DNA from: Takakia lepidozioides
Taxonomy: Eukaryota; Plantae; Bryophyta
Direction: 5' to 3'
Assembly: GCA_030704615.1 (NCBI GenBank)
Contig: CM060733.1
Span: 43,152,001-43,216,000, forward strand
DNA length: 64,000 bases
Shown here: piece by piece, positions 36,540 through 56,200 of the stretch
How the letters are laid out: every line of letters starts with the position of its first letter
How positions within the stretch are numbered: position 1 is the first letter of the stretch
Notes under the pieces: model-generated
Database searches by the model: none
What the model saw: the letters and a program-made list of their open reading frames with translations, nothing else
Told to the model about the DNA's origin: nothing
Position numbers and translations under genes: made by a program

Positions 36540-39151
36540 TCACTCGTCATTGTCATCAATGTCCACACACTCTTTCACCAGCTGCTTCTCCCGGACAGCA
36601 GCCTCTAGCTGGCGGAGCTCATCTATATCCTGCCATAACCTTTTATCGCTAACAAGCTTGCTTTCCATTAGTCGCGCACTGCAGCCTGTGTACAAAGTCA
36701 TTCACTCACTCAAAACAAATGGCAAACGTCCAAGTGCAGAACAGATTGATGCAGACACTTAGTAGCTAATATTCAGCTCATATTCAAAAACAGGGAAAAA
36801 TAGAAAAACCCACCACCAGCACTCTAACTGCACGTCTAAATGACAGAACAAAGAAGGAACTTGGTAAGGACCATGAAATACCTCAAAGAGCTTACAGATA
36901 GTAACACATAAGAAACGAAGAAACAAGTACAAACTAGAAGAAACATCGTCACTTTATCTTCCGCTATCAATTTTAATTGTACCCTTAAGATATCCACAAT
37001 TTTCATATTCTTGAATTGAGGATACAAGATAGGTTGAAACATTACCTGCAGCGGCACATTGACATGAACCCTCCGTTTTGTGACTTGCTAAGTAGCTTGT
37101 GGCCACCCCTCGATCATAAATATGATGACAATCCTCACTGCAGTTCAACCCAAGCTTAATCCAGGGTCCTCATGGTCCAATGCTCAATGTGATGGCCCAA
37201 TAGTTCTTTGTTTCTTGAGGAAGAACTATACCATAGGATGGTCCAAACCTCAAGTTCTTCCACAAGATAGTAGCCAGAGGGTTCTCGGGCAATTCGAGAA
37301 AACTGCGATAAGTAATCTCTGATATCATTATTGAAGATGCCTTTCTATCCTGCACTTCCATTCGTTTATTTTGTGCTTCCCTATCTCAGAATGGTTGGCT
37401 ACCAGTCCCTCTTGCTCCCTCATACAAACGCGACACACACAATCCTGCATCCATCCTCTGCTGTCCACACATATCATATAAAAAAACTATGGAAGCAAAA
37501 CTTGCATAAATAGATCAATAAATGTACCTGCGGACAGGGTCATCTAGGTCAACAACTGGCTTCCCACTGAGTGGGCATGTAAGATTTAAAACCGAGTACT
37601 TGCAGCTTGTAAGCAATACATCATTCACATCTCCCTCTGAATGTTCATCTCCAGACTTGTGATTTTTCTGCACAGATAATACGAAGTAACAGTGTTTCAT
37701 GTTCTTCCTAATCGAATTTCCAAAACCGGAAAATACAGAAATTTAGCAGGCCAAGTAACAACTGGACCAAAAACGCAGTTTACTTTAACATTAGATGATG
37801 CATGCGAAACGGCATTAACATCAGGGCAGTAGCAGGAAACATGTGTGTACCATATTACCCAGATTCCGTGGCAGCTGCCCGCAAGGGTTTCCTCCCCTGC
37901 CTCTAATTATTCAGGCTATCTGCTCATCTCAAACATCGTCATGGCAATAACTTCTCAGAGGTCCAATACTTCTTTCATAAATTTCAAAACAGATTATCCT
38001 TGATTTTCGACATCACCCCTATAGATTACCTTGCATTCAGCTCTCGCCTCTCCATCGACATATTGCAAAACTTCTATGATGCCGTCCTCCTCATCCACCC
38101 GCGTATCTGATCTCACATCCTTTGGCATGTCTGCCATCTTTGAAACTGTGGTACCAACGAAGGCTGTAGTTTCCACAGCTTTCCAATCAGCAGCATTGAT
38201 TGTCTCACCATCATTGCTACATGCACAACTGGCATTCAAGTTGCAAGAAAAATTTTCAGCTAAAGAGGAGACTGCTTCCATGTAAGTATCCCGAAAATGA
38301 GGTTTGCGATCCCCGTAGCCAGATGGTTGTGATTGATCATGACTGACCTGCATGAAGCCACAGTTCTTCTTAGTGGTCTTTGTAGTCGCTTTCTTGAGCC
38401 ACTGCTCACCAAAACTATCCTCCACGATCCCCCCAAACTTGTGCCTCTCATTTGCCCTTGTTCCTTCCACCCAATCGAACATTTGTGGCTTAAAGTCTTT
38501 ACAACCCCTGACATCTTCCCATTCAGCAGACAACGGGATAGAGGCAAGATCCTCCCTGGCAACTTTCTGGTTGCTGCACGCATCCATTGTGTTTTTCTGT
38601 GGTGTCTTATGACACCCTTTTGTTTTCTCTATGCAATTCGAGGGGGATGGCTTACAATCTGGGCACTCTTCAAGCGATGATTCATCTGCACATACCTGCG
38701 CCGGATCACAGGAACCATTCTTCATCCACATGTTGCTTACCGTATAGTCAGTGTCTTCCTTCTTGTCCTTCTTCAGTCCTCCTGGGTCTTTGACTGTAGT
38801 GTTCACTGATGGTTTCTTCTCTTCAAGTTTCTTACAGGGCTGCTCTGCCAACCCCTGTGCCTTGCTACTCCCCTTGTCACTACTCCCTGACTTCCTACCA
38901 TGACCAACAAGTTCAACCATTTCGGGCTTCACTAGATCCTTCTTAAGAGCATCATGGCAGAAACCTACTACTTCTTTCCCATCTCTTTCAGAATAGAGGT
39001 TGCTCTCCTGCAATTTCCTTATTGCTGGTTTTTCGATGCCGTCAGCCCTTTCTAGCCCTAACCCCCACAATTCCTGATGGGATTCGCCAAAGTTTGTCAT
39101 GCAACCTACACATCTAGTTTTGATGCCGCATTCCACATTCTGTGCTCCCAT
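36540..39151 (-). CDS. NSE2/MMS21-like SP-RING (zf-Nse) SUMO E3 ligase-like protein with long N-terminal extension
   Basis: Exons 37667-37528 (VLNLTCPLSGKPVVDLDDPVR), ~37137-37046 (SEDCHHIYD...CAAAG), ~36685-36540 (stop), small exon ~37900-37859 (..GIW). Large upstream exon 39151-~38030 ends at AAG|GTAATC; its linkage is inferred. Confidence 0.7.
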
Positions 39152-40201: not shown

Positions 40202-43200
40202 CTAGAGCATGGACTCTTCTGCAGTCTCAATGGTGGCCCTGTCACGGTGTTTCACAACCCAATCTATGAAGTCAAAGGTGCCTGCCAACAAGCTATGGGC
40301 TTGTGAAACCACGAGCACTGTACTATGTGGCAACCCCTTGAGCACTGCCACCACCCTTGCTTGCCCCTCTCCATCCAGATGCTGCAATTAAACCAACCAC
40401 ATGAGAAATCGACAAAAGCTTTAGTCTCGCACAATAGAAACAGTGACGGACAACTGGCACCCCATGCATTCCAACTCCTCAATTCCCTTCTATCATGAAT
40501 TAACCATCCATCTCTTTTGGTGAGCTCTCTCTTGTTCTCAACATTCAACAACCTTGTCTTGCAGTGACGTACCGAGTATAAGGAGCGTACCTGCAGAACT
40601 TCATCAAGGACAAGGAGGTTACAATCTACACCCCCCCGTTGTGAAGCAAACTCCGCGTATCCTAGAGCCAGTGCCAATGACTGCCATCCCACCTCACCCT
40701 GAGTTACATTCATACTAGACCTGGTAGAATTGGCACAGTATCCACTCACGTAAGTCAGAAGACCTGCTCTGGACAACAGAAAGTCACCAGTGTTTCATGC
40801 AAGAGAGACAAACACATCCAACTGACCCTGCTTGTGCATAGCTTCAAGGCCATATATTTGGTGATGTTATAAACAGATCAAAGAAGCAGGCAATACACCT
40901 GATTCAGATGTTCTCTACCTGATGGAAGTAAGGGTGACACAAATTGGAGTGCATGATCTAACAGCTTCTACTCACTGACTATTCCCTGCATTGGCTGTGA
41001 AGACTGCACTGCACATACTTTTCTAGACCCCTTGGAGCACCACAGGTCAGGCTCGGTCGGTATTAAGAGGCTGAAAGCCGCACATCACTGTAGACGTGCG
41101 AGGCCTCTCTTGGTCAGAAGAGTGTGACAGAAGTAGTGTTTCTGTCATACTTCCCTTGTTCATATAGTGCAAATTAGCAGCTTATAGAACATTACCACTG
41201 ATTCTGGCTGGTTTGTAGGAATGTCTACCTACCACTGATACTGATTTTAGAGTCAAGTGGCTGGAAGTATGGAGTGCCACCAACTCAACTTAATCAAGAG
41301 TCACGTGGTTGGTACTATCTTTACTCCAAAACTTGTGGAGGTGGTTGGTGACCAGGTCAAGAAAAAAACTCAAGCCTCACAATATCAAGTTTCCTAATTC
41401 TGACACAGGACATTGGCTACTGTAGGCCAGCCAAAAGAGCAATGAACATTGATGGGATCACGTAGAAGGTGCATACCTACATTGCAGTATGCTGCTGCTA
41501 CAGAGCCTAGCACAAGATATCAGGGACTAGTTTGACATCAAATTGGTTCGTTAGGAACTTGCATGGACATACCATTCTCTCGCTTATGGGACAAGAAGAA
41601 GAAAGAAACAACAAGAGAGAGGGGCCACAAACAGCCCAAAAGCAACTAAAGCTCAAGGGATTGTCTAAGAGTCAATGCTTCATGCAGGTAAGTTGCCAAG
41701 CATTTCTAATCTCGAGAAAGATCTTTTTCATGTGGTGCAAAAATACGAATTGGAAAAGTATGCAGTGAAAACTTGCCAAACGCCTGCGCTCTCCCCCACT
41801 TAGTTGACGAAGTGCACGATGCTCCAGGGTGCCATTGGACAGGTGCACAACTGCTATCTTGTCAATGGCCTCTACAGACACTTTGCTGCTTTTGATGATC
41901 TTGGTAGGCTTTAGTAACAATTCCAAGGAACCACCAGACAGTGATTCCAAGTACCTCGCCGTCCTCTCTTGCACCTCTGCCAAGGCTCCTTCTAAGATGT
42001 AGCTCTGCAGACTCGAACAAATGCGGAACCACTCAGCTGTGTCCGTAAATGATACTAATACACATGGTTGAAGCAAAAATATGTTTTGACCTCATGGCCA
42101 TGGCATATAAGCGACTAGGATTTCACACTGATCAAGCCTGACAACTGCTTGAAAAGAATGTGCTCACATGTACTGCAACATGGTATAATAGTGCAAAGAA
42201 ATTCATGTTCAAAACGGCCATGGCAAATAATGCACCTGGACACCCGTCAGGCCGAAACTAGTATGTATTTCCTTCAGCCACCCAGCCTCCTCCAAGGAGA
42301 GCTTCAGGAGGGACTCATTCTCCAGGATATCAGCCTGCAAGGTCGCATACAATCTAGAAATGACCTTGAACTCTGCCTCGTATGGATTCTCGTTATTCTT
42401 CACCATAGTGCACTTGATCCTTAGCTGCTCTACTGTGGTCTTGCAAGTTTTCCCTGACAGCACTTTGCCTTCTAGTTGTTGAATCAAGTATCTCAAATCT
42501 CCTTCCCTTGCATCCATTTCTTCACTGGATAGGTCTCTAATGTTTTCATTGGAGTTGTTGGGTGAGAGTGAATCTTCTGTAACAGGAAAGTCAGCTGTAG
42601 ATGCCTGCCATGATGCTGAAGAAAGAAACTTTGAAGCAGCATTTAGAACCATTTGAGCAGATGTCACACCTTGTCGAATCCTATTGAGCTGCAAATAACA
42701 TCACGTCCAGCTTCCCGTCAAGCCTGCTAGGCAAGTCACAAGGCTTTGATACACTCACATAGCAAAAATGAAACCAACTGGCAATCAATCATTCTCAGTG
42801 AGTGCTGCCCTCTTTAGATGTAGAACTTGCAAACAGCAGGACTCTCCTGTTACAGCAGCCCTCTTGTCATATGATAGTCCAAACTGCAGCTCCCTCTGGT
42901 TACCCTTACAAACAAAGTCCCTGTAACACTTTGTATGCAAACGATGACAATGTTCAAGACACCAGAAGCCCTATCCTCATAAATCAACAAAAGCTTCTAA
43001 GGCTATAGGAAATACACCAAGAAGTCATGCATTCTAGATTGCACCAGAGGCCTTCAATAAGCAGGTTAACAGCTGCTGGATACATGTGAAAGTAGTTTCA
43101 CAGAGGTTTGCTTGAATGCATCCTGAGCTTTCGCCAGTTTGGCATTTTCCTCAGCTATGCCTCTCCGCACACGCTTAAGCTCCTCCTCACTGTTCTTGTG

Positions 43201-46200
43201 CTCCTGCTCATGTATCAATATCCCAAGGTGATTGTCAGACTGAAGGTGGTCTTGTGATGATAAAGCTGCATGGCTGTTCCCCTGTATGTTCAAGTAGAGA
43301 AAAAGAAGGTCCACGGGGGACAAAAATAGACCACCAAGAGGAAAAGCGAGAAGAAAACTTGTTGGTCCAACAGGCCATAGGGTTGACTGAAAGGAAGTTC
43401 CATATGAGATTTTAAATACCAAACATGACTTAAACCCTAACAAACTCCCTATATTTGCTGGAGGGCCTCATGCTGGTAGGCCACGAAAGCAGTTCTGGTG
43501 TTTTAACTGATGGCCTCTGTGAAAGATGACCAGTCATGGAAAAGACAGTAGTATCTCCATCCAACCTCATACTACATTGGACAGGAGGAAAGAAATGGCG
43601 TTTTTCTCCCACATCGACAAGTTGCATACTGGAAACCCTAGGCATGTCATCAATCCATAGAGTTCAGTTGACTCCCAATTTTCCCAGGGCTATAAGGATA
43701 TGGAGAGTGTGACAGACAAGTAGTCCACATAAGGGTGCGATCTATCTCTGATATAAATGTGTCTTTGCAAAACTGGAGCTTCGTTTGAGCTGAGCTCCGA
43801 ACCTTACATCCTTTGCACAAGTCATCCTCTTAAGATCCTTTCTGATTCCGTTGCTCTTGTATTGCTTCGTGAGGTTTAAACACTTGCCAATTTGAAGGCA
43901 AATCCCTCAGATAGACCATGAACTATCGCTGAGCTCAATCCTGGCAGCTTACGTTCCAGCAGCAACCCTGGTCTGGGAAGGAAGCTGATGAGTGGTCAGT
44001 TCAAACCAAATGATGTGAGAATGTTGTAAGGTTCCTAGACCCAATTATCCTTCTTAGTAGCTCGATCATTTGTCTCTGACTTGACTCTGTGAGTTCTAGT
44101 CCCCGAAATCTCGCCGATAGTGTTGTGGGAGTGATAAGCTAGCCAAACAACCACTTCCTGAGGACAGTGCCTCTGATGTTTACTTGGCTGGTCTAGTATT
44201 TGAGAGACGAAGCTCAGCAACTGCCAAACCTGTCTGTCACAATATCATATGGAGGGTCAGGAGATGAGGGGTACTTGTATCCTATACATGGATTGCCATC
44301 CATGTGAAGGAGTCAATACCTCAATCGCATGACCCACAAAGAAGAACATTTTCATACGTTGTGTCATTGTAGGAGATAAGTTAACAGAGACAAGGAATCT
44401 GCTTAGCGAGTACGGACAAAGACACCCCAACTCAGACTGAGGCAACCTCTACATCAGAAACTCGTCACTCTGGAAGACTCTGGGGGAGAGAGGACATCCC
44501 TAGTTCAAGCCAATGCTACTCTACACCTTGGCAGACAGCTCCCCCGCTGCTCTCACCCTGCCAATGACACTCTTGATCACCGCTTCTTGAACTTTTGTCT
44601 CTTGTAGCCAGTTCACAAGAGAAGACAATGAACATACTCTCTATCTTTCTCTTCCATAATGGGGCTGATTTGTGAAGATGTGATTTAGCGTAGAGCTCCT
44701 GAAACCTGAAACCTGGGCCCAGTTTGTCTCTGCTCTTATGTAGAGAAGAGAAAGAAACAAGGAAAGTAAGTTTCTACAAAGCTAAGCAAAATGTTAGCCT
44801 GAACACGGCGCAAGTTGTTCATGAATTTATAGGCTCTAGCTCGTCCATGAACCGCATTGTTTGATGCCTTAACGCAGAAACACACCTCTAAGAATAGCTG
44901 ACGCTGATCCCGTGAGGTGGTCAAATCAGCCTCAAGCTGCAGCAGACTTTGAGAGGCATGGTTAGCATCAATAGGTTGCAGGCAGTTCTCACACAGTAAT
45001 GACCCTGCCACATTCATTTTGAAAGCCTCCAGCATTTCCCTCCTCTTACCCACGTCCGCCTCTGCATTCTTCACCTGCCATGCAAGAAAACATCTTGTCA
45101 CTCTCTGCAACAAAAGACTGATAAGAAAATCTTGACCCAATAAGAGAAACTGCGAACAAGACAAAGAACCAACTTCCTGATGGCTGCAGCAAATACCTGA
45201 CTAAAACCCTCAATGGACTCGTAAGGTGAAGAAGTCGGGACACTTGGAGGTAGGAAACACACGGTCTATGCTTTGGTCACCACCTGAGAATGAGTTGTGT
45301 GCTTGTCGAACAACACCATGAGTGAAAGATGTTACCACCTTCTCTACAGAGAGCGCCTATCTTCAAGCACCAGTTAGCACCGTCGAGTGAATATAACTTT
45401 GGCTTTACATCCATGTTCTGAAGACTGTGATATATTCTCTCTCTGGAAAAGCATCCACCAGATGCCCCGGGGGTTAAGGCAAAAGGCTACCTTGCAAGTG
45501 GTTGTGGGTTCAACGTACATAGGTGTACATCGCCGCTTACAGCCAACCGAGCTACCAAAATGGGGGTCACTATGTCAACACAGGTCACCTAATACATGCT
45601 GGTTCTTGTGGTTTTTGAGTCTTTTGCGGGGGAATTGATAACCATGTTGACCCCGTTACAGCCATTAGCAGGTGTCCACCTTCCAAAGGGAAGGAAGTAG
45701 CTGTTCAGGGTGGAAATTTACCAGACTCAAACCATATGAAAACAAGGAATGTCACCTTGTCAGACATTTGTGCTGTTCTTTCCAATAGAGTCTCAAGAAG
45801 TTCTGCATTGCCTGTCTTCACTGTCCCAGCTTGCCTCTTGGGTGCGGTCCATGCCTCCATGCCATCTTGAAGGGCCTGCTCCAACCTCTTGCCCAGAAGC
45901 TCCCAAGAACACAATGCAGCTGCCACCTTTGCATGCAACTGACTGCAAGTTGCTATTGCACCCTGCAGCTTCAGTTCCGCATCGCACAGTTCTGCTTCAT
46001 TTGTTGCCACTTGTTCACCCCTACATTCTCACCTTCTCTTTAGTATAATATTCTGCTTTTCTACTGACTTTAGGCTGTCTACAAAACTGGGTGTAGACTC
46101 TGTGGCATCCCTGGTTCTTCAAACATTGATAGCGTTGCTACAAAGAAGCTAACACAGGAAAGAATGGCATGCATGTTTAAGACTCCAACTGCACTTGATT

Positions 46201-49200
46201 TGGTAGCATGTACACAAAACAACAACTTGCTAGCGCAACTAAAACGACTAATCTGCCTTGGGTTGCTGTAGAAGGTTCTTCTCTACCTGCGTCTCTCCCA
46301 TTCATGTGAGCAACACATGCACTCATCCACCTGCAGGTACAGCACATTTTGCTTCAGCAAAGGAGTCCTTTTGATCCCTTAGTCTGTACTTGATGCATGC
46401 AAGGTTAAAGTGCATGGGACTAGAATTGCACCCAGATAAGACTGTAAGGAGGAGCGACAGAAACCTTTCTCAAGAATGAGGTGCTGAGGCCAAACGAACC
46501 TCACAAAAGTGCACACTGAGCAAGAAGAAGGGGACCTTCATTTTTAGTTGCTGATGTTGTTGAGCCAGCTGTTGAACGGCACCCTCAAGGCGCTCCACTT
46601 CTGTGCGCTTCATACAAAGTACTTTCATACTGTGCTCCCGGGCAGCCACCCACACCTCCATCACCATGAACTTGCTCAACTCCTCCTGTGCAACTTCATC
46701 AAATCAGCTTCCTCCAACATGTTATCATGGTGCAAGCCTTCAAAAAAAGATATGCGCTAACTTTTCTTACAGTTCCAGCTACTCAACTGCCCATTACTCC
46801 AGTGTTGTGGCTAAGCGGGCCTACCTTAAAGTCCTTGTCAGAGGCTTCAAGCAACCCACCAGCACCATACTGCCCATGAAATACTGTCCGGTGAAGGACC
46901 GAGGTGCCTCTGCAGTGCTTAAGCAGATGCAAATAGGTACATAAGCATATGTTGGGGAAAGAAAAAAACACGGTAGCAACAAACTTCGAGCTTACGGTTA
47001 CAAGCTATTGGATACTTTTGCAGCATATAGCATTAGCTCACTCACAAACCTGGACAGCTAGACATTCCAATATATTGTTAAACAGATGTCTGGAGCCACC
47101 TGTGAAGTGCAGAATAGTCAACATTTCCCTAAGGATTAATCTCCAGGAGATCCCATTACAAGACGTCATGAATAAAGCCCTGCCAACCAAACATATGCAC
47201 ACATTCCATTCCACTTTAATTGCCATGTGAAAGAACCAGGAACAAGCTAAGAGAGTACATGAACTCATCAATGCACTGTTGAGTCATCCGAATCTCCTGG
47301 CATGTCTTATCCTCACCATCGACAACAAACTTCAGCCCAGATTTTCTGCAACAAGATTACCAGCCAGTCATGCCGTGAAGTATGCTCTCTGGTTTTCAAC
47401 AACCTGTTGGCACCTGAAAAATATGAAATAGCATCATAGACTAGGATGCACAAAAGCAAGTCGGAGCATTCCAACAGAGAGACCAGTATGTGATATTGAA
47501 AAGAGCATAGATAAGGGCCACACCCTTGAGCCACGTGTCAAGAGGCCAAAGAACACCCTTTCACTAAGAACAAGATACAAACTTATCAGTCCTTGCCTTT
47601 GCTCAACACCCCTGCCTAATATTCCTTTTGATGGGCCCATGCGTTTGTGACACTCTTTTGATGTGTCTTCTCCATAAACACTCAATTCCCTGCTACTGGA
47701 TTGCAATCAGCTGCAATGTGCCGTAGAAACTTTTGGCTGAGTCTCATGTGACAGAGGGGCTGATCCCTCCGTTGACTCAGGAGGTTAAGTACACCACAAT
47801 GACTGGGCAATGTATAAACGACAAATGAGTAGATTCTCAACCTCTCTTTTTAATCCCACTCCTCCTTGCAAAAAGGTTGCTCCACGGGATGTTTCCTAAA
47901 GACCTGTGGATTTCTTGTGAACAAAAAGTAGTCAACATGTACTAAATGGTGCATTTAATTAAAGATAACGTGAAGGGATGATCTTAGAGAGAAAACTTCC
48001 ATCTTCTTCTCGTCTTGGAGATAATCTCTTCATCTCTCTCTGTGTCAACCAAGATCTTTTGGTTGTCTTGAAGTTCTGCTATGACCAATTAGCTCACAAA
48101 TAAATTCTATTCAATCCCTGTGGATATGTCTTTGGCCCCTGTGGATATTAATAAAACAACTATAAAGGAAAAAATAACCATTTAACAGGTTAAACTCAGT
48201 AGAAGGTAATTTATGGAGCTCCATACACAAGCATAATGCAAATGGCAAGCAACAACGGGTGCACACAATCTACCTGCCTGCTACTCGTTCTACAGTGAAA
48301 GGTGTTCCATTGATGGTGCCATCCACCCGTACACGTGCACATTTGGCATTATGATGCACCACCTCTGCTGCTGTCAATCCACGAACTGAATCTGGCCGTG
48401 CATCTGTGGAGCCTGGACCAACTATCCATGTTAGTTCACTTGTATGATTATGTACCCTCCGCCTCCTATGCCAATGGTTGGCGGCCATATATGGCCTCCC
48501 TGTCTGCAGCCGTAGTTGACAAGGCCTAGACAGCAAAAACAGGTCAAGTACCTGTGAGGGCCCACAGAGGAGCCATAACAAGGGTGGTCTTTCCAGCACC
48601 ATTGCTGTCTGCACCGCTTGAGTCCAAATTTTGGCCCGAAACTATTCGCACGCCTCTCTCTGCAAGTGGGTACTTTACGGGCTCTAGGAATACCCCAAAA
48701 CCCTCCATTTCGATACCCTCCAACTTCAAATGCACTGCACAGGAGTAACCAACCAGCTAGATCAGTGACTAATGCAGGATTCAAGAACAGGCATTGTGGA
48801 AAAACACTTTCCACCACCACAATGCTACTTCAGTTGGTGCATGCTTAAAAGGTTTCATAACAAGATATTTAAGTCAGTCTGTAAGCGTCAACTTCACTAC
48901 ATTGCTTGCCATACCATTGTGGACAAAAATGGAAAAAATTGTGAGTGCGTTTCCAAACCAAGCATAACTTATGGTATCACTGCGCAGGGCTACTGCCTTC
49001 CGGTGGGAAGGTGGACATGTGGTTTGAACCCGCAACCACTAGTGAGGTGGCTTGTGACATTATTATTGGGCTAAATGTTGGTTGTCCCATTGTGGACATA
49101 AAAAAGTCCACCCCGAACAGGAGGCAGTACCCACAAGGGGAAATGGCCCTTGTCTACACTGGCTTTCACCGGAGTCTTTTCGCTTTCATCGACACAGATC

Positions 49201-52200
49201 CTGTGTCCCGCCCACACAGAGAAGAGCAGCTGGATGGACTAGAAGGAAAAGAAGACAGCAGAAAGAGACACTACATGTGCAGGCTCACTGTTCGAATCAA
49301 AGTGGTTCCCTAGTAAGCTCTTCACTAGTGCCTTGATCCGGAAGAGACTGATATGACACTGAACTGCTTCCAGAATAACCAAATGCTTAAACAAATTGTC
49401 ACATACAAATTGGGAATGGTCCATCCATAGAGCTGTTGACTTGTTTTGGACTAAACTAAAATATTCAAAACATTTCAGGCGGCGGCTCCAATAAGACTTC
49501 TTTGAGAAAAAAAGAAGCCTTATATGAGAGACGTGTGTCCATGGACCTGCTCTTTGAAACCTCTAGACAATGAACACCTATAATACATAGCTGGTGAATC
49601 CTATAGATGTGTGGTACGTGACACATTGTGACCAAGTGTCCTTTCTTGAACCACTAATCACTGCTCCTAAGCACCACCACATGATTATTTTCTTCCCTTT
49701 TTAGCCTCGCACCACATTTTCCAAGCAGCACATAGATCAGCCAAATGTGAGTACGCCTATGAGGAAGTAGAAAAGTCACCTAGAGGCCTCCGAATGAGCT
49801 TAGCAGGCAAGTTCAAGCTGCGCAGCATGTCGACTGCCATCTTGGTGACTTTCTCATTCATGGTCACACTCTTTGCATAGAGTCCAAACAGACCAAATGC
49901 ATCCTGTGTTAAAGAAAGCACAGATCAGTCTCCATTTACCGTCAGACAGTCTGCACATTATCAGAGCAGGTCATCTTGTTACTTAGTAGCCTGGTATATA
50001 ACAAGCACGAAACAAGCAAACTTCACCAACAGAATAAGGCTCCTTTCCCTGGAAAGACCAGCATGCATGAACTCAAAAACAGGATTGCTCTTCACATAAT
50101 AACAGCAAGGATGACAATTAACTATGCCAGAGTTAAACTGTCCTCTTGGCATTAAGAAAGATTGGACAAGGAGGTGAGAAAACTACCAGGTGCTCAGCTT
50201 CCTTGATGCGCTGCCTGGATGTGACAATAGGGTAGACCAGATCAACCAGCACTCCCCTCCTTTGCAGCTCTTCCTGCGTAAGGTTACATTCATCAGCTGA
50301 AGTGTAACCATAGAATCTGTTGTCGAACCACTTGTCCATGATCTTTCAGATGAAGGCATTACACCTGAACTAGCTAATCAACCCACCAAGGTATTAGAGC
50401 ATCGTGACACAGGTATTAAGGCCAGCCGCATACGAATCAGGATAATTATACACAAACTGTGCCTTCATGCACATCTCATGGCTCGTGCTCATTAAATAGC
50501 ATGCCCTGGATGCACTGACTGGCAGGTTGCTTATGGGTTGCGCTATTTTCAAGGTTTAGAGACACTGACCACTACCAACATTACTGTAAATTTTCAAAGA
50601 ACACACTAAAGTCCCTGATCATCCCTCAGTCACAACCAAACGACTTCATAGCATCCAAACCTCATTCACAAGTAAAACGACACAATCCCACCCAAAATCC
50701 TTGCTTCAGGTGTCATCAAAAGACAACTTGTCGAGAAGCTGCATGCACTCCTGGGAGTCCTACTGGCTGACACCCACATCTAAACTCCATGCAGATTCTC
50801 CAGAATCATATAAAAGTTGCAGATTAAGCTTAGTAAAAAAGCCCCATGGCAGGCCAAGTCACATGCGGTATATTTGGCTTTTGTGATATCAGCCTCCATT
50901 TGCAACAAAGATGATAAGTGAAGCCAAGGTGTACCAAATGTAGTTGACCTGACATGTAATCAGATGGCAACGGTAAGGGGCTATGGTTACGTACCAGATG
51001 TCCTTTACTAGAGTCATCCAGAGTATTGGAGGAGAGATGCCAGCGAACGCGGTCACCAACCCGAACATTTCTGACCACCTCAAGGGGTAACCCTTCATTT
51101 TGAGAGACTATGAGGTGTCTTGGACCTATATCCACTGGAATTTCTCCAATCTTCTGCTTTGATGTTCATCACACAGGAATTCCACAAGGCAAAAGAATTC
51201 ATTCAGATATTGGATCAGAAATAAATGGCCACCTAGTCAAGATATATGGCCACCTAGTCAAGATATATGGCCATACGACAGGCACTGCTTGGTTTTTTGT
51301 GTGGTCAGCAAAGGTGGCCTGCAGCCTTTGAGCACCCAAAAGCCACACTATGCCAACTGGTGACCCACACATAAAAAAAAGCACCACATTAAAGTAACTG
51401 CCAAGCAGTGAGGTGAACCCCACATAACTAAAAAGATTGAAACCACACAAAAAGCAATGCATCACAAGCTCACAAGTCAGAATAAGGCAGATGTATTTGC
51501 AAAACTGAGCTCAAGGTCTTGCCTGCCAGTGCTTGTCAAGAAGCAGAAAATGCTTTGCCTGGTCACTTTCCCCAATTGAAACTTGGTAGGGAGAACCAAC
51601 ATATTCAATTTGAGTTCCCTCTACCACATGTGGCTTATGATAGTGGCCTGTATAGACTGGCAAATGTGCAGGAAACACAGATGGGTCTAATCCCCCCTTT
51701 GCCTGGAATGCCTCGTTCATGAATGCTCCCACCTGGATAAACCATGTTGAAATACTTTCTTACTTGCTGATAACAAAGATTTGCTGGCCCCTTTAGCACT
51801 TTCGTCACCAAGATCTCCTGAAGTTTGAACTTTAATTTAGATGACTACTTTGTTTTTGTTTTTGGACAGAGCACAATTGTCAGATTGAGAACTAGTAATA
51901 AGATATATAATCAGAGATCAGAGAGGACATCCACACAATCATGTCCAATGGAGAGAGATAAAAATGTACTCATAAGACTTCGTTTGCCATAGACTTGTGG
52001 TCATAGACCCCGCGCCCAGTTTGGACCAATGGACGGAAATTGACACATGGGGAGAGGGAGAGATGAACAAGAACACAACTAGAATGACACTTTATTTAAA
52101 AGCATCCACCTATGGTTATGGCTGTTTACAATCCAATTGCCTGTAAAGGTATATATATACAGCCAGTTGCCACAAGTTTCTTGCCACCTAGAGAGGTTTG

Positions 52201-54088
52201 AGCTGTCAGTCTATCAAACACCAGTGATTGCAATATTCACATACTCTGCTCGCAAGTCAGTGGAAAGCCATGACTGAGCAGAGAGAGGACAACTTACTAC
52301 ATCCACATGGGCAAAGATCGCTTGAACAGTGCCATGCTGCTGCAGAGCCTGCGCAATCAATGTGTAGTCACGGCGAAACGGCAACCAAAGAGCTCCCAAG
52401 TATTCTACAGGACTCGACAACACCTTGATGTAAGGATTGGCTGCTTCCAACACTTGCAATGCATGAACCTCTCCTCCCAAATTCACCTGTCACCCACGCA
52501 ATAATCTTTATCCCGACCTCAAGGTTCACAAACAAACCACACCAAGCACATAAAAATTAACCACCATTTCACCTAAAATTCAGGCTGAAAAAAAACCTGG
52601 TCATGATTGCCAGGAATAAAAATGGCAGGGCAATCCCACATTTGCAGCTCCATTACAGCCATATTCAAGAGCTCCACAGGTAGCGCTCCTCTTGCATGCC
52701 AAAAGTCCCCCAAAAATACAATGCCTGCCTTCCTGCACAGCCCTTGTTACCTGTGACTGGCCTGCCCGCTTGCATTTCTAGAGGGTAATGCTTAAAAGAG
52801 TACACTTGTTGGCGAAAAATTGGTCCTGTGTTCAGAACAGAAGCCTAACCTGGCACATGCCTCAGCATGGACGGTTCGAAGAACTTGCAGACATGTGTCA
52901 TAAGTGCGCCTACTCAAATGTAAATCTGAGAACACCACCCATGTTTCCACTTCTGTCCACACATCCACAACCTGAGACAATCTCCCACCATAAAATCTTG
53001 CTCTTAGCATGAGCACATGCTTGACACCTTTAAGTCGTGTACCCTATGTGGCAATGCAAACACAAATGGTGTGTAAAAGGTGTGCCAAACTAAGGGATGA
53101 GGACATTGAGCAATAATCCTTGTCAACTTCCATCTGGCAAAGGAAGGTGACAGGCATATTAACTTGCAACTGTCAATCAATAACATAAGAACCAAGAGTC
53201 AAGAGAAAGATTTTTGCCCATTCACATCTGCATGGCACTAAATCAAGCTGCGAAGTGGGGACTTGCTACAAAATCATGACCACCACCTGTCCAGGGCAAG
53301 TGGAAGGGAGCTGTGTATCAGCAAGGTGCGATCACAGATGCAGATGACACCAGGGAGTGCATCTACTATTCCAATTGCTGAGGGTGAGAGGGTGGGCAGT
53401 GGTGCATGGAGCCATCCTGATATATGAAATAGGAAGAAGCTACCGGCCATGTGTGCTCTATCACCTGTCTACTTTGTTGGCCATAATTTCTGGTTGTCTT
53501 CACATGCAATTGCCTGACGACTCAGTTCTGTGTTAACACAGCATTTTACTGATTGTGGGTTATTCTGTGCAGACGAAACGGGTAGGTGTCTCTTACTTCC
53601 AAAGACCCAGTCAGAGATTACGCTAGTACTGATGCACCCGGACGTAGAGAACTTCCACCTAACGAGGGGTGAAACAGGAACAAAGTAGCTAAACCGTGGA
53701 AGAGCATGAAATCAAACTCAGATCAGTGCCTCACTTGAAGCTGAAGTGGTACCTAACTTAGACTCACCGTCTTGGCACGTGAAGATGGAGAACTAGCAAC
53801 TTCCGTGTCAGCAAAGGGTGCGCTCGAATTTATAGGTTTTCGGATGCAGAGTTTTGCAGCGGGTACATTCACATGGGTCAAATTGGCAGTTGCGAAAACA
53901 TATTTGCTGCCAGACGAGGTGCGCGAAGCAAGCTTCCACTGGCCTGGAATTCGGGGAGCCCCAAGCGATGTAAGTCCCGTTGTCCTGCAGGAGCAAAGAG
54001 TCGCCTGCAATGCTACTACAGGCCAACCGCATGATGCCATACATGATCGCGCCAGCGTCATATGCTTGAGTAATGGCGCAACAGCCAT
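40202..54088 (-). CDS. Single-chain SbcD(Mre11-like nuclease)-SbcC(Rad50-like ABC-ATPase) fusion with transit-peptide-like N-terminus, about 20 or more exons
   Basis: Phosphoesterase motifs FSDLH (52971-52850), LGDFWH and PGNHD (52732-52597), FAH (~52310), TGHYH and YVGSPYQ (51732-51523). Linker exon 49903-49780 splices in phase to 48734 (VHLKLEGIEMEGFG; Walker A SNGAGKT 48586-48606). Coiled-coil exons, Zn-hook CENC (~44985), LSGGERRR (~41795), LLVLDE and HLD (40.3-40.6 kb), stop at 40202. Some central exons not resolved. Confidence 0.88.
45495..45701 (-). repeat. Intronic SINE/MITE-like repeat related to 48987-49132
   Basis: Reverse complements gctacttccttccctttggaaggtggac and ttgaacccacaaccact match 48989-49016 and 49024-49040. 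Confidence 0.5.
48987..49132 (+). repeat. Intronic element with imperfect terminal inverted repeats and a B-box-like motif
   Basis: gggctactgcct..ggtggac ... gtccacc..aggcagtaccc; GGTTTGAACCC at 49021-49031. Confidence 0.45.
51225..51273 (+). repeat. 21-bp tandem duplication (atggccacctagtcaagatat x2.3), intronic
   Basis: Directly visible. Confidence 0.9.
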
Positions 54089-54584
54089 CCAGGAACGGCC
54101 CGGACCATCAGCAGTATGAGAGCGCAGTGTGCGCACTATCAACTGCGATGTTCATGTGTGAGAGAAGGCGCAATGTAGGTAGGCGTATCCTATGCACCGG
54201 GCTCGTTCTCCCTCTCTCTCGTCTTCATGGTCTTATCGCTACCTAGATTCCCATCCTTCTCTGCGTGGGTCAGTGAGCTGTGGACTTGTTCTCTCTTCTT
54301 CTTGAAGCAGCAAACAGAGAGGAAAGGGAGAGTGCAATTGCCCGTTGTGTGGGCAATCTGAAGACAGTATTCATTTTCTGATACACTGTCCGGGGTTCTC
54401 TCACCAAAGACACGCTCTCTTCAACTCTATCAAGGGAATTGTGCCTGTACCCCCTGTTTACCAACTTTGAAATCTCGAGGCTGAGCCAAAAGCCCAGGCC
54501 CTAGTTTTTGGGCAAATCACACTCAGCAGATTGATGCTTGTGTGAAGGGATTTCTAGAGGATATCTGGAAAACCCGGATTAATT

Positions 54585-56200
54585 CTTCTTCTTTTTTTCG
54601 CGGAACAGGGGGGTGTGGCCCTGTTTTACTTTATTGAAAAAGGGAAAGATACAAGCATAGCATCATGAGGAAAAAATAACCTCAATATCAAAGTGCCATA
54701 GAGGCTGATGTACATCTGGCTTTCCAGATATTCCATAGCGTCTGAGCTCTGAGGGAACCCCATACCGGGCAAGGTGACCACAATGCATCCTCTTGAAAAT
54801 TAAGAAGTAACACTGAGGTATCATCCCGAGGGAGAGGGTTCCAGAAGGAGTAGAAATTCCGGACCATACGCCAGGAAGCACGGGCAGCGTGACAGTACAG
54901 TAGGCAATGCTCCATGGTTTCAGGCACGTTCATGTTGCAAAGCTTACAAACTGAGCTAGCATCAGAGACAGAGTAAGAGACTGGGAGAATTCTGTTAACC
55001 ATCTTCCATCGAAAGCCCGACAGCTTTGCAGCCCGGTCTTTCCTCCAAATATCCTTCCAAATGCACTTCCAAGATTTGGGATGGCCGGAGAAATGAGCCC
55101 ATTTCTTGGTAAACTTGAGATCCACTGGGATATGGAAGTTGAGTAAAGAGTACCCTTTCTTGACCGTGTAAGAGAAGAAAGGCGAGTGCTTCTTATCTTG
55201 CCAAATCCATTCACCAGGGTCGAACTGTAGCAAGGTTAGCGGAGCCAACAAAAACCAGAGGAAGTGAGAGCTTTGGTGGCAGCCATTGGCCGCTGAGGGG
55301 CTGATCTTGCCAGTGTTCATACAAATGACTCTGATGGCGTAGAGGGCAACTTCCTCGCAATGAGAAATTCCAGGAGAGTGTAAAAAACCAGAAGGGTGGA
55401 CTTTAAACAACCAGCCCCCAAGGGAAGAGCCATCCCGGGACATAGCAAAGAAAGCTTTTTTGGGAATGATACCCTCCAAACCCCACCATGTGTTGAGGGC
55501 CTTCCTGTTACTGGGATGGGAGGTCATTCTATATATGAAGGTAAGTCTTACTACCAACGTCACCCCCTGAGAGAGGTAGGTTCTGTCCCTTTTGTTCCCG
55601 CTCAAACTGGGCACGGGGTCAATGGCCACAAGGCTACGGCAAACAACGTCTTATGAGTACAATCTCTTCTGGTGGTGTTCTTGGATCAATGCCAATATTG
55701 CTTCTGGATCCTATATAGGAGGAACTCTCGTGCATAATTTTAAGCGAGGATTCTCCAATCTGGAAAGTCCAGGGTCCCAAGCTAGTTTCTAGTGGTGATC
55801 CGTAGAACACAAGTCATGTGAGAAGGGTATATAATAAGAGTGAAGCTAAAACGATCAGGTCAGAAAGTGGCAACGCAGTTGTTTCAAGACTGTGAAATGA
55901 GGGTGATGGATAGGCCTTCATTTATTTTGCAACAATGGCCTCCCCTGGTCGAGGTTCATAAGGCAGAGGAGGCTACCTCAGGAGCAGTGTTACTACTGTA
56001 CATAATATTACAGCTCTGCCCCCTAACAACATAATTTCAGGATGTACTGAGCCTATGCTCCTCAATAGATGCCTTCCACCATTGCCAACCACTAACAACT
56101 CTTTGAAAGGTCTACTCTCTTCAAGCCAACGTTTTGCAAGAAAGAAGTGAGCATAAGTCTGCCTGGTTTTCCATTCCATTCCAGAGGGCATGTTTCACAT
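54585..56200 (-). mobile_element. 5'-truncated L1-like LINE (zf-RVT region and 3' end)
   Basis: ORF 54688-55629: WKCIWKDIW..KLSGFRW, CKLC....ETMEHCLLYC, LWNIWKARC. AATAAA, stem-loop and A-rich tail at 54585-54635 on the minus strand. 5' limit approximate. Confidence 0.8.

What the first reader, a model, noticed from the sequence alone, without database searches (positions are those of the whole stretch)
40202..54088. Intron-containing single-chain SbcD-SbcC (Mre11-Rad50-like) fusion with a putative organelle transit peptide
Seen: all Mre11/SbcD phosphoesterase motifs (DLH, GDFWH, GNHD, FAH, GHYH) and all SbcC/Rad50 motifs (Walker A SNGAGKT, CENC hook amid coiled coils, LSGGE, LVLDE, HLD) lie in one gene. 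The linker exon 49903-49780 has no stop and joins 48734 in phase (G+TG=Val). The first exon is Ser/Arg/Ala-rich and nearly acid-free. Known: Mre11/Rad50, SbcD/SbcC and T4 gp47/gp46 are normally separate polypeptides, and nuclear plant MRE11 and RAD50 look different. Inference: a prokaryote- or phage-type, self-contained end-processing and hairpin nuclease for plastid or mitochondrial DNA repair. I know of no characterised organellar SbcCD in land plants. The H-loop region reads VVSQAH instead of the usual ITH.
Basis: partly seen in the sequence, partly recalled or inferred. Interest (0 to 1): 0.88.

Follow-up and report, generated by a model that had tools for sequence, protein, structure and literature searches.

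The report
Phage-type fused Mre11-Rad50, probably organellar
This moss gene makes one protein that joins both halves of a phage-type DNA-break-processing machine; the fusion was catalogued in 2011, but import-like tags across algae and early land plants suggest it is an unrecognised chloroplast (and perhaps mitochondrial) DNA-end nuclease, one not found in seed plants.

Summary
The gene is real: 21 exons on the minus strand (54088-40202), about 1,206 aa and open throughout. RNA-like contigs from two studies splice across 49780/48734, and the Marchantia ortholog has the same 21-exon layout. The fusion itself is not new. Yoshida et al. 2011 (PMC3175470) listed it in Physcomitrella, Micromonas and Phaeodactylum, with no mention of plastids or targeting. 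It resembles phage gp47/gp46 (PHROG E 4e-31 and 4e-55) far more than canonical SbcCD or MRE11/RAD50, and its closest non-eukaryote relatives sit in phage-like contigs, some as recA-nuclease-ATPase-ruvC clusters. New here: named eukaryotic homologs come only from plastid-bearing lineages. All 27 primary-plastid members tested carry N-terminal extensions, typically basic and acid-poor, that phage copies lack. Six of 17 complex-plastid models show a signal-peptide-plus-F/W/L plastid-type presequence (control 0.3%). No fern or seed-plant hit was found. The H-switch His is replaced by Gln in most eukaryotic copies. Best reading: an organelle-imported DNA end and hairpin processing nuclease, a candidate for the unidentified resection step in algae, bryophytes and lycophytes. 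Location and activity are untested. No earlier scan note covers this gene.

The parts
53768..54088 (-). Exon 1: ATG and 107-aa N-terminal extension, putative transit peptide (no acidic residue in first 90 aa; further in-frame Met at codons 10 and 17)
52850..52971 (-). Exon 2: nuclease motif I (SDLH)
52597..52732 (-). Exon 3: motifs II (GDFWH) and III (GNHD); Pfam Metallophos
52298..52486 (-). Exon 4: motif IV (FAH)
51523..51732 (-). Exon 5: motif V (GHYH); followed by a GC-AG intron
50995..51153 (-). Exon 6: capping domain
50187..50273 (-). Exon 7: end of capping domain
49780..49903 (-). Exon 8: two helices (helix-loop-helix, Rad50-binding, inferred) plus short linker
   Evidence: PMC3175470
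48735..49779 (-). 1,045-nt phase-1 intron at the nuclease/ATPase fusion point; same position in Marchantia
48552..48734 (-). Exon 9: start of ATPase head, Walker A (SNGAGKT) with P-loop insertion; Pfam AAA_23
48274..48412 (-). Exon 10: ATPase lobe I
47259..47345 (-). Exon 11
46825..46909 (-). Exon 12: Q-loop (FHGQ)
46536..46685 (-). Exon 13: start of coiled coil
46287..46330 (-). Exon 14: coiled coil (44 nt)
45756..46020 (-). Exon 15: coiled coil
44886..45074 (-). Exon 16: zinc hook CENC at 44993-44982
43102..43281 (-). Exon 17: coiled coil (donor uncertain: 43112, 43102 or 43084)
42236..42688 (-). Exon 18: coiled coil return arm (acceptor 42688 or 42680)
41777..42004 (-). Exon 19: ABC signature LSGGE; predicted GC donor
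40591..40680 (-). Exon 20: Walker B (LVLDE)
40202..40381 (-). Exon 21: D-loop (HLD), H-switch column Gln (VVSQ), stop codon

Best explanation
A nucleus-encoded, single-chain Mre11/SbcD-Rad50/SbcC nuclease-ATPase of phage gp47/gp46 type, imported into plastids (in mosses possibly mitochondria as well), where it processes broken, blocked or hairpin DNA ends so that RECA-dependent recombination can repair or restart the organelle genome. Shown: one spliced transcript; nuclease metal ligands, Walker A/B, Q-loop, signature, D-loop and zinc hook present; Mre11 and Rad50 folds in a moss ortholog's model; phage-type ancestry; acid-poor N-terminal extension. Inferred from known MR/SbcCD biochemistry: two chains pair through the Mre11 dimer, the ATP-bound heads and the CxxC hook; ATP clamps the heads on duplex DNA and the Mn-dependent nuclease clips or trims the end. 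Inferred from sequence only: organelle import, and which organelle. The His-to-Gln change in the H-switch may slow ATP turnover and lengthen the clamped state (speculative). One gene with one import signal would deliver both activities in fixed 1:1 ratio, which may be why the fused form was the one kept.
For: Spliced single transcript. Motifs invariant across 34 aligned members. Model of the Ceratodon ortholog, pLDDT 80.9, matches Mre11-Rad50 and E. coli SbcCD structures. PHROG gp46-like and gp47-like families E 3.7e-55 and 4e-31 against 7.8e-8 and 5.7e-5 for bacterial SbcC and SbcD models; ESM Atlas nearest clusters are all phage fusions. Named eukaryotic homologs come only from plastid-bearing lineages. 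27 of 27 primary-plastid members have extensions of 45 aa or more (median 93; acidic share 0.02 in the first 50 aa against 0.13 in the mature part); phage-like copies start within 0-34 aa of the domain. Six of 17 complex-plastid gene models have a hydrophobic segment followed by a small residue and F/W/L and an acid-free stretch, against 2 of 624 internal windows and 0 of 27 primary-plastid members, the pattern Gruber et al. 2015 use for plastid import (PMC4329603). Tree keeps streptophytes and ochrophytes+Chromera each together. Organelle resection proteins are stated to be unidentified (PMC6981420) and RecBCD/RecFOR are absent in moss, Arabidopsis and Chlamydomonas (PMC7076466).
Against: No localisation, mutant or assay exists. 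My targeting test is a home-made rule, not TargetP or ASAFind; 11 of 17 complex-plastid models fail it (several look truncated at the start, some look mitochondrial). Moss and green-algal N-termini are often Arg/Leu-rich and could be mitochondrial or dual. The H-switch His is lost in most eukaryotic copies, so ATPase activity could be low. MR complexes alone make only short resections and need partners (PMC13402864); no such partner was looked for. No seed-plant or fern hit, so it cannot be the resection enzyme of Arabidopsis organelles.
Confidence: 0.6

Rival explanations
1. Organellar, but not a resection enzyme: it acts mainly as an ATP-clamped DNA tether or nucleoid organiser, or it removes hairpins, over-replicated forks or unwanted organelle DNA (clean-up or degradation, as T4 gp46/47 also serve host-DNA breakdown).
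For: H-switch His replaced by Gln in 117 of 132 family proteins while phage and Cyanidiales copies keep His; long hooked coiled coil suited to bridging; T4 gp46/47 annotated for both recombination and host-DNA degradation; E. coli SbcCD cuts cruciforms and hairpins (PMC4787754 abstract).
Against: Nuclease metal ligands, Walker B Glu, Q-loop and signature are invariant or nearly so; closest unfused relatives lie between recA and ruvC, a recombination context.
Confidence: 0.24
2. A nuclear or cytosolic extra MR-type nuclease (back-up repair or anti-viral DNA clearing); the N-terminal extension is a disordered tail, not an import signal.
For: No direct localisation; basic extensions can also hold nuclear localisation signals; the family is abundant in viruses.
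Against: Signal-peptide-plus-F/W/L presequences in six ochrophyte models point into the complex plastid and do not fit a nuclear protein; canonical MRE11/RAD50 are present separately in moss, Micromonas and Phaeodactylum (PMC3175470); no named hit from plastid-free eukaryotes.
Confidence: 0.13
3. Two neighbouring genes or a mis-joined model; no fused protein is made.
For: None found.
Against: Spliced contigs from two studies cross the joint; one-chain orthologs in moss, liverwort, lycophyte and algae; same intron at the joint in Marchantia.
Confidence: 0.01

Closest known systems
Mre11/Rad50 fusion proteins of Yoshida, Claverie and Ogata 2011 (PMC3175470), 'moss-diatom-prasinophyte group' (Physcomitrella A9RK34, Micromonas C1N0B1/C1FJU6, Phaeodactylum B7FXD6)
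   Same: Same domain order, helix-loop-helix plus short linker, non-canonical placement; window exons 2-21 are nearest to moss proteins, conserved exons at about 70-90% identity; my tree recovers moss, diatom and Ostreococcus-type members in one family.
   Different: That paper called the distribution sporadic, proposed lateral transfers among these eukaryotes and does not mention plastids, transit peptides or targeting. Here the family is broad across plastid-bearing lineages, roughly follows species groups, and carries import-like N-termini. That my Physcomitrium hit equals A9RK34 is inferred, the accession was not shown by the tools.
Phage T4 gp47/gp46 and related phage recombination nucleases (PHROG 100 and 77)
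   Same: Best-scoring profile families; His after motif II; hook and split ABC head; nearest unfused relatives in phage-like recA-nuclease-ATPase-ruvC clusters (L001, L002/L008).
   Different: Single chain, longer coiled coil (ATPase half about 750 aa against 560), N-terminal extension, Gln at the H-switch; T4 itself is distant in the tree.
E. coli SbcCD; archaeal and eukaryotic Mre11-Rad50
   Same: Fold of both halves, catalytic motifs, zinc hook.
   Different: Far below NCBIfam cut-offs (about 31 bits against 478 for SbcC; 23 against 78 for SbcD); separate chains there; E. coli is a long outgroup branch.
Virus-related organelle DNA-maintenance proteins such as MSH1 and Twinkle (own knowledge), and moss RECA/RECG/MOC1 pathway (PMC7076466)
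   Same: Nucleus-encoded, non-endosymbiont-type DNA enzyme predicted to serve organelle genomes.
   Different: Different enzyme class; those are experimentally localised, this one is not; not found in seed plants.

Membership tests
Mre11/Rad50 fusion, moss-diatom-prasinophyte group (Yoshida 2011) | N-terminal Mre11-like and C-terminal Rad50-like domains in one polypeptide | tested here: met
   spliced contigs across the joint; open frame; Pfam hits on exons 3 and 9
Mre11/Rad50 fusion, moss-diatom-prasinophyte group (Yoshida 2011) | Groups with Physcomitrella, Micromonas-type and diatom fusions outside canonical clades | tested here: met
   exon-by-exon nearest proteins are mosses; tree of homologs; window protein itself not put in the tree, moss orthologs stand in
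Mre11/Rad50 fusion, moss-diatom-prasinophyte group (Yoshida 2011) | Helix-loop-helix and 9-12 residue linker between the halves | tested here: met
   two helices then a low-confidence 12-residue loop before the first ATPase strand in the ortholog model; contact with the coiled coil not measured
Mre11/SbcD nuclease | Five phosphoesterase motifs with dimetal ligands | tested here: met
   motif II ends in His as in Mimivirus R555
Mre11/SbcD nuclease | Mn-dependent exo/endonuclease activity | not testable with these tools
   needs assay
Rad50/SbcC ATPase | Walker A, Q-loop, signature, Walker B, D-loop, coiled coil with central CxxC hook | tested here: met
Rad50/SbcC ATPase | H-switch histidine | tested here: not met
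   Gln in the window and in 117 of 132 family proteins; His in T4, E. coli, phage relatives and Cyanidiales
Canonical bacterial SbcC/SbcD | Reaches NCBIfam sbcc/sbcd cut-offs; separate genes | tested here: not met
   (moss ortholog)
Canonical eukaryotic MRE11/RAD50 | Groups with yeast/human MRE11 and RAD50 | tested here: inconclusive
   no eukaryotic MRE11/RAD50 rows in my tree; no such chain among PDB sequence hits at E<=1 and only 10-13% identity in fold matches; Yoshida 2011 place the moss fusion outside that clade
Organelle-imported protein | Cleavable acid-poor N-terminal presequence absent in prokaryotic or phage kin | tested here: met
   (composition only; cleavage not shown)
Organelle-imported protein | Observed location in plastid or mitochondrion | not testable with these tools
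   needs GFP fusion or organelle proteomics; TargetP/ASAFind not available

The most novel reading that the evidence does not exclude
A phage-derived, single-chain Mre11-Rad50 was acquired once near the base of red and green plants, became a plastid (and in some groups mitochondrial) DNA end-processing enzyme, followed red plastids into diatoms, eustigmatophytes, chrysophytes, cryptophytes and Chromera, and was lost in ferns and seed plants. It is the missing end-resection or hairpin nuclease of algal and bryophyte organelles, and its loss helps explain why organelle genomes of later land plants tolerate repeats and rearrange more freely.
Probability: 0.3. Interest if true: 0.85.

Novelty: new member of a known kind. 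Interest (0 to 1): 0.62.

Why it matters
Reviews state that the proteins that resect broken DNA ends in plant organelles are not identified, and RecBCD and RecFOR homologs are missing (PMC6981420, PMC7076466). This family gives a concrete candidate in organisms where gene targeting is routine (Physcomitrium LOC112281621, Marchantia Mp3g22150, Cyanidioschyzon BAM81923.1, annotated 'similar to desmoplakin'). It would add a further virus-related enzyme to the organelle DNA toolkit, offer a natural one-chain MR complex with an altered H-switch for mechanistic work, and give a testable link between gene loss and organelle-genome fluidity. The limit: it seems absent from seed plants, so it would not answer the question for crops or Arabidopsis.

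Tried and rejected
Two-gene or artefact reading: rejected by spliced contigs and conserved exon layout. First exon-11 candidate at 47413 rejected on phase; 47345 fits. Endosymbiont origin: a pattern scan of 185,579 GTDB species gave 4 weak hits, none titled cyanobacterial or alphaproteobacterial (pattern-based, so not exhaustive). Eukaryote-to-phage transfer: free trees nest a phage clade next to green plants, but eukaryote monophyly is not rejected (AU p 0.517), so neither history is shown; the careful bootstrap tree did not finish. PDB sequence search gave only weak ABC-head matches. Ten literature searches found no functional or localisation study; accession search returned only Yoshida 2011; the ochrophyte plastid-proteome paper does not mention the family in its main text and its supplements are not held. 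Earlier scan notes held nothing on this gene. As the operators asked, the joined spliced protein was not sent to any search, fold or tree: searches were made exon by exon by reference, and fetched moss and lycophyte orthologs stood in; exons were concatenated only inside one script to count stop codons.
Full report
Observation. A 21-exon model runs from ATG 54088 to the stop at 40202 with no internal stop; three alternative splice sites give 1,200 to 1,216 residues. The first in-frame stop upstream of the ATG is at 54154, so the frame cannot start much earlier.

Transcript evidence. Two public runs hold the region. Laid on 48301-54300, run X1 gives one 3,927-nt contig with no mismatches in the listed pieces that skips exactly the nine predicted introns, including the 1,045-nt intron at the fusion point and a GC-AG intron after exon 5. 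Run X2, from another study, shows the same fusion joint. The runs are only guessed to be RNA, and contigs show no strand or level, but the joints are splice joints. The part of the X1 contig beyond 48301 is 2,028 nt, which fits the predicted rest of the coding sequence plus 20-70 nt. Exons 11-21 were not read directly; they are supported by tblastn of five orthologs and by the Marchantia gene, which also has 21 exons with matching boundaries, including the intron at the fusion point. Per exon the nearest proteins are from Sphagnum, Ceratodon and Physcomitrium, so the genome is most likely a moss.

What is known. Yoshida, Claverie and Ogata 2011 (PMC3175470) described Mre11/Rad50 fusions starting from Mimivirus R555 and listed Physcomitrella A9RK34, two Micromonas and one Phaeodactylum protein as a supported group outside the canonical clades; these organisms also keep normal MRE11 and RAD50. 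The paper contains no mention of plastids, chloroplasts, transit peptides or targeting and proposes lateral transfer among these eukaryotes. A search for these accessions and Mp3g22150 returned only that paper. The fusion is therefore known; its biology is not.

Family and range. The Walker A exon alone found 342 representatives, many of 1,050-1,550 residues with the match at residue 340-630, that is, fused. Three homolog searches and cluster look-ups name mosses, liverworts, the lycophyte Diphasiastrum, Spirogloea, Mesotaenium, Closterium, Chara, Chlorokybus, Mesostigma, many chlorophytes, Cyanidioschyzon, Cyanidium, Galdieria, diatoms, Nannochloropsis, chrysophytes, Triparma, Hanusia, Chromera and Euglena. 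All have plastids. No fern, hornwort, Selaginella, gymnosperm or angiosperm was named. These searches are word-indexed, list at most 120 rows and leave most rows unnamed, so single absences mean little; the lack of any angiosperm is more telling because they are heavily sampled (inference).

Origin. The Ceratodon ortholog scores E 3.7e-55 and 4e-31 on the phage gp46-like and gp47-like PHROG families but only 7.8e-8 and 5.7e-5 on bacterial SbcC and SbcD models, far under their cut-offs. The nearest Atlas clusters are phage fusions. A scan of GTDB gave four weak hits; viral contigs gave 64. The closest non-eukaryotic relatives are phage-like: unfused pairs between recA and ruvC (L001, L002) and fused copies on phage-like contigs. 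In trees of the nuclease and both head halves streptophytes form one branch in roughly species order, ochrophytes with Chromera another, red algae lie near the base, and two fused copies from possibly giant-virus contigs (L009, L071) are sister to all of these; T4 and E. coli are distant. A phage clade nests beside green plants in the free trees, but holding all eukaryotes together is not rejected (AU p 0.517). One early acquisition is thus allowed, not shown. Supports are SH-aLRT only; distant outgroups were dropped, and the window's joined protein was not used.

Anatomy. An AlphaFold model of the Ceratodon ortholog without its extension (pLDDT 80.9) shows phosphoesterase and capping domains, two helices and a short loop, a split ABC head and two coiled-coil arms around the CxxC hook. 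Its fold matches are Mre11-Rad50, SbcCD and SMC structures. The two helices correspond to window exon 8, so that exon is mainly the Rad50-binding helix-loop-helix rather than a plain linker (inferred from position, as). The H-switch column is Gln in the window and in 117 of 132 family proteins, but His in T4, E. coli, phage relatives and Cyanidiales; the His two residues later is not conserved (23 of 132). Walker B Asp-Glu is kept. His-to-Gln occurs in slow, degenerate ABC sites such as TAP1 (own knowledge), so slower turnover is possible but untested.

Targeting. Window exon 1 has no acidic residue in 90 positions and is rich in Ala, Ser, Thr and Leu. All 27 primary-plastid members tested have an extension (median 93 aa) with a median of 2% acidic residues in the first 50 against 13% in the mature part; phage-like copies begin at the domain. 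The most specific evidence comes from complex plastids, where import needs a signal peptide followed by F, W, Y or L (PMC4329603). Thalassiosira, Detonula, Skeletonema, Nannochloropsis, Ochromonas and one more diatom model fit this; 11 other models do not, several being visibly cut short at the start; the rule fires in 2 of 624 internal windows and in none of 27 primary-plastid proteins. Galdieria starts Met-Ala-Phe, as red-algal transit peptides often do (own knowledge). The rule is home-made and was shaped after seeing some of these sequences, so it is supportive, not a validated prediction. Moss N-termini could be mitochondrial or dual.

Mechanism and verdict. The likeliest role is an organelle-imported MR-type machine that binds DNA ends with ATP and clips or trims them for RECA-dependent repair (0.6); the main rival is an organellar tether or clean-up nuclease (0.24); a nuclear role is less likely (0.13). 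Organelle resection factors are described as unidentified and RecBCD/RecFOR as absent, so the idea makes an open question testable in moss, liverwort and red alga. It does not extend to seed plants. That moss and Lycopodiaceae mitochondrial genomes are structurally conservative while those of seed plants are fluid is my own recollection and the link to this gene's loss is speculation. Novelty: new member of a known, uncharacterised fusion family, with an organelle reading that I could not find in print. Interest 0.62.

Limits. Subscription journals are mostly outside the paper library.

Noticed in passing
window 54108-54254 (minus strand): Four short upstream ORFs (3, 12, 15, 16 codons) in the transcribed 5' leader; the one at 54108 overlaps the main ATG out of frame. 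Could damp translation.
   Followed up: no
window 51523 and 41777: Two GC-AG introns; the first is confirmed by both runs, the second is predicted and matches the Marchantia exon boundary.
   Followed up: partly
window 50273-50282: A contig of run X2 runs about 9 nt past the exon 7 acceptor into the intron: incomplete splicing or an alternative acceptor.
   Followed up: no
window 45673-45701 and 48989-49017; 51951-52026: A 29-nt element occurs twice in inverted orientation in introns, and many unrelated contigs lie partly on 48986-49017 and on 51951-52026: short dispersed repeats, perhaps MITE or SINE ends.
   Followed up: no
window 51221-51272: 21-nt tandem duplication in intron 5.
   Followed up: no
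window 54688-55629 (minus): 313-codon ORF with a zf-RVT domain, a LINE-type retroelement remnant 600 nt upstream of the gene.
   Followed up: partly
window 37994-39151 (minus): 385-codon ORF downstream with no Pfam match.
   Followed up: partly
L001 1443-6764; L002 5878-10669: Phage-like contigs with recA, nuclease, ATPase and ruvC in a row: a compact recombination module whose nuclease-ATPase pair is among the nearest kin of the plant fusion.
   Followed up: partly
L009 5986-8859; L071 3379-6528: Fused copies on viral contigs (80 kb and 372 kb) with patatin, laminin-EGF and fatty-acid-hydroxylase neighbours, possibly giant viruses; sister to the eukaryote-plus-phage family.
   Followed up: partly
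diatom and chrysophyte homologs such as P0111, P0224, P0209, first 150 residues: An extra small conserved segment between presequence and nuclease (GD-V-V ... GWY), suggestive of an SH3/Tudor-like barrel.
   Followed up: no
P0157, P0415, P0225: Odd gene models: Spirogloea with a second copy of the ATPase start, Chara joined to retroelement domains, Galdieria joined to an isocitrate/isopropylmalate dehydrogenase domain; probably annotation merges.
   Followed up: no
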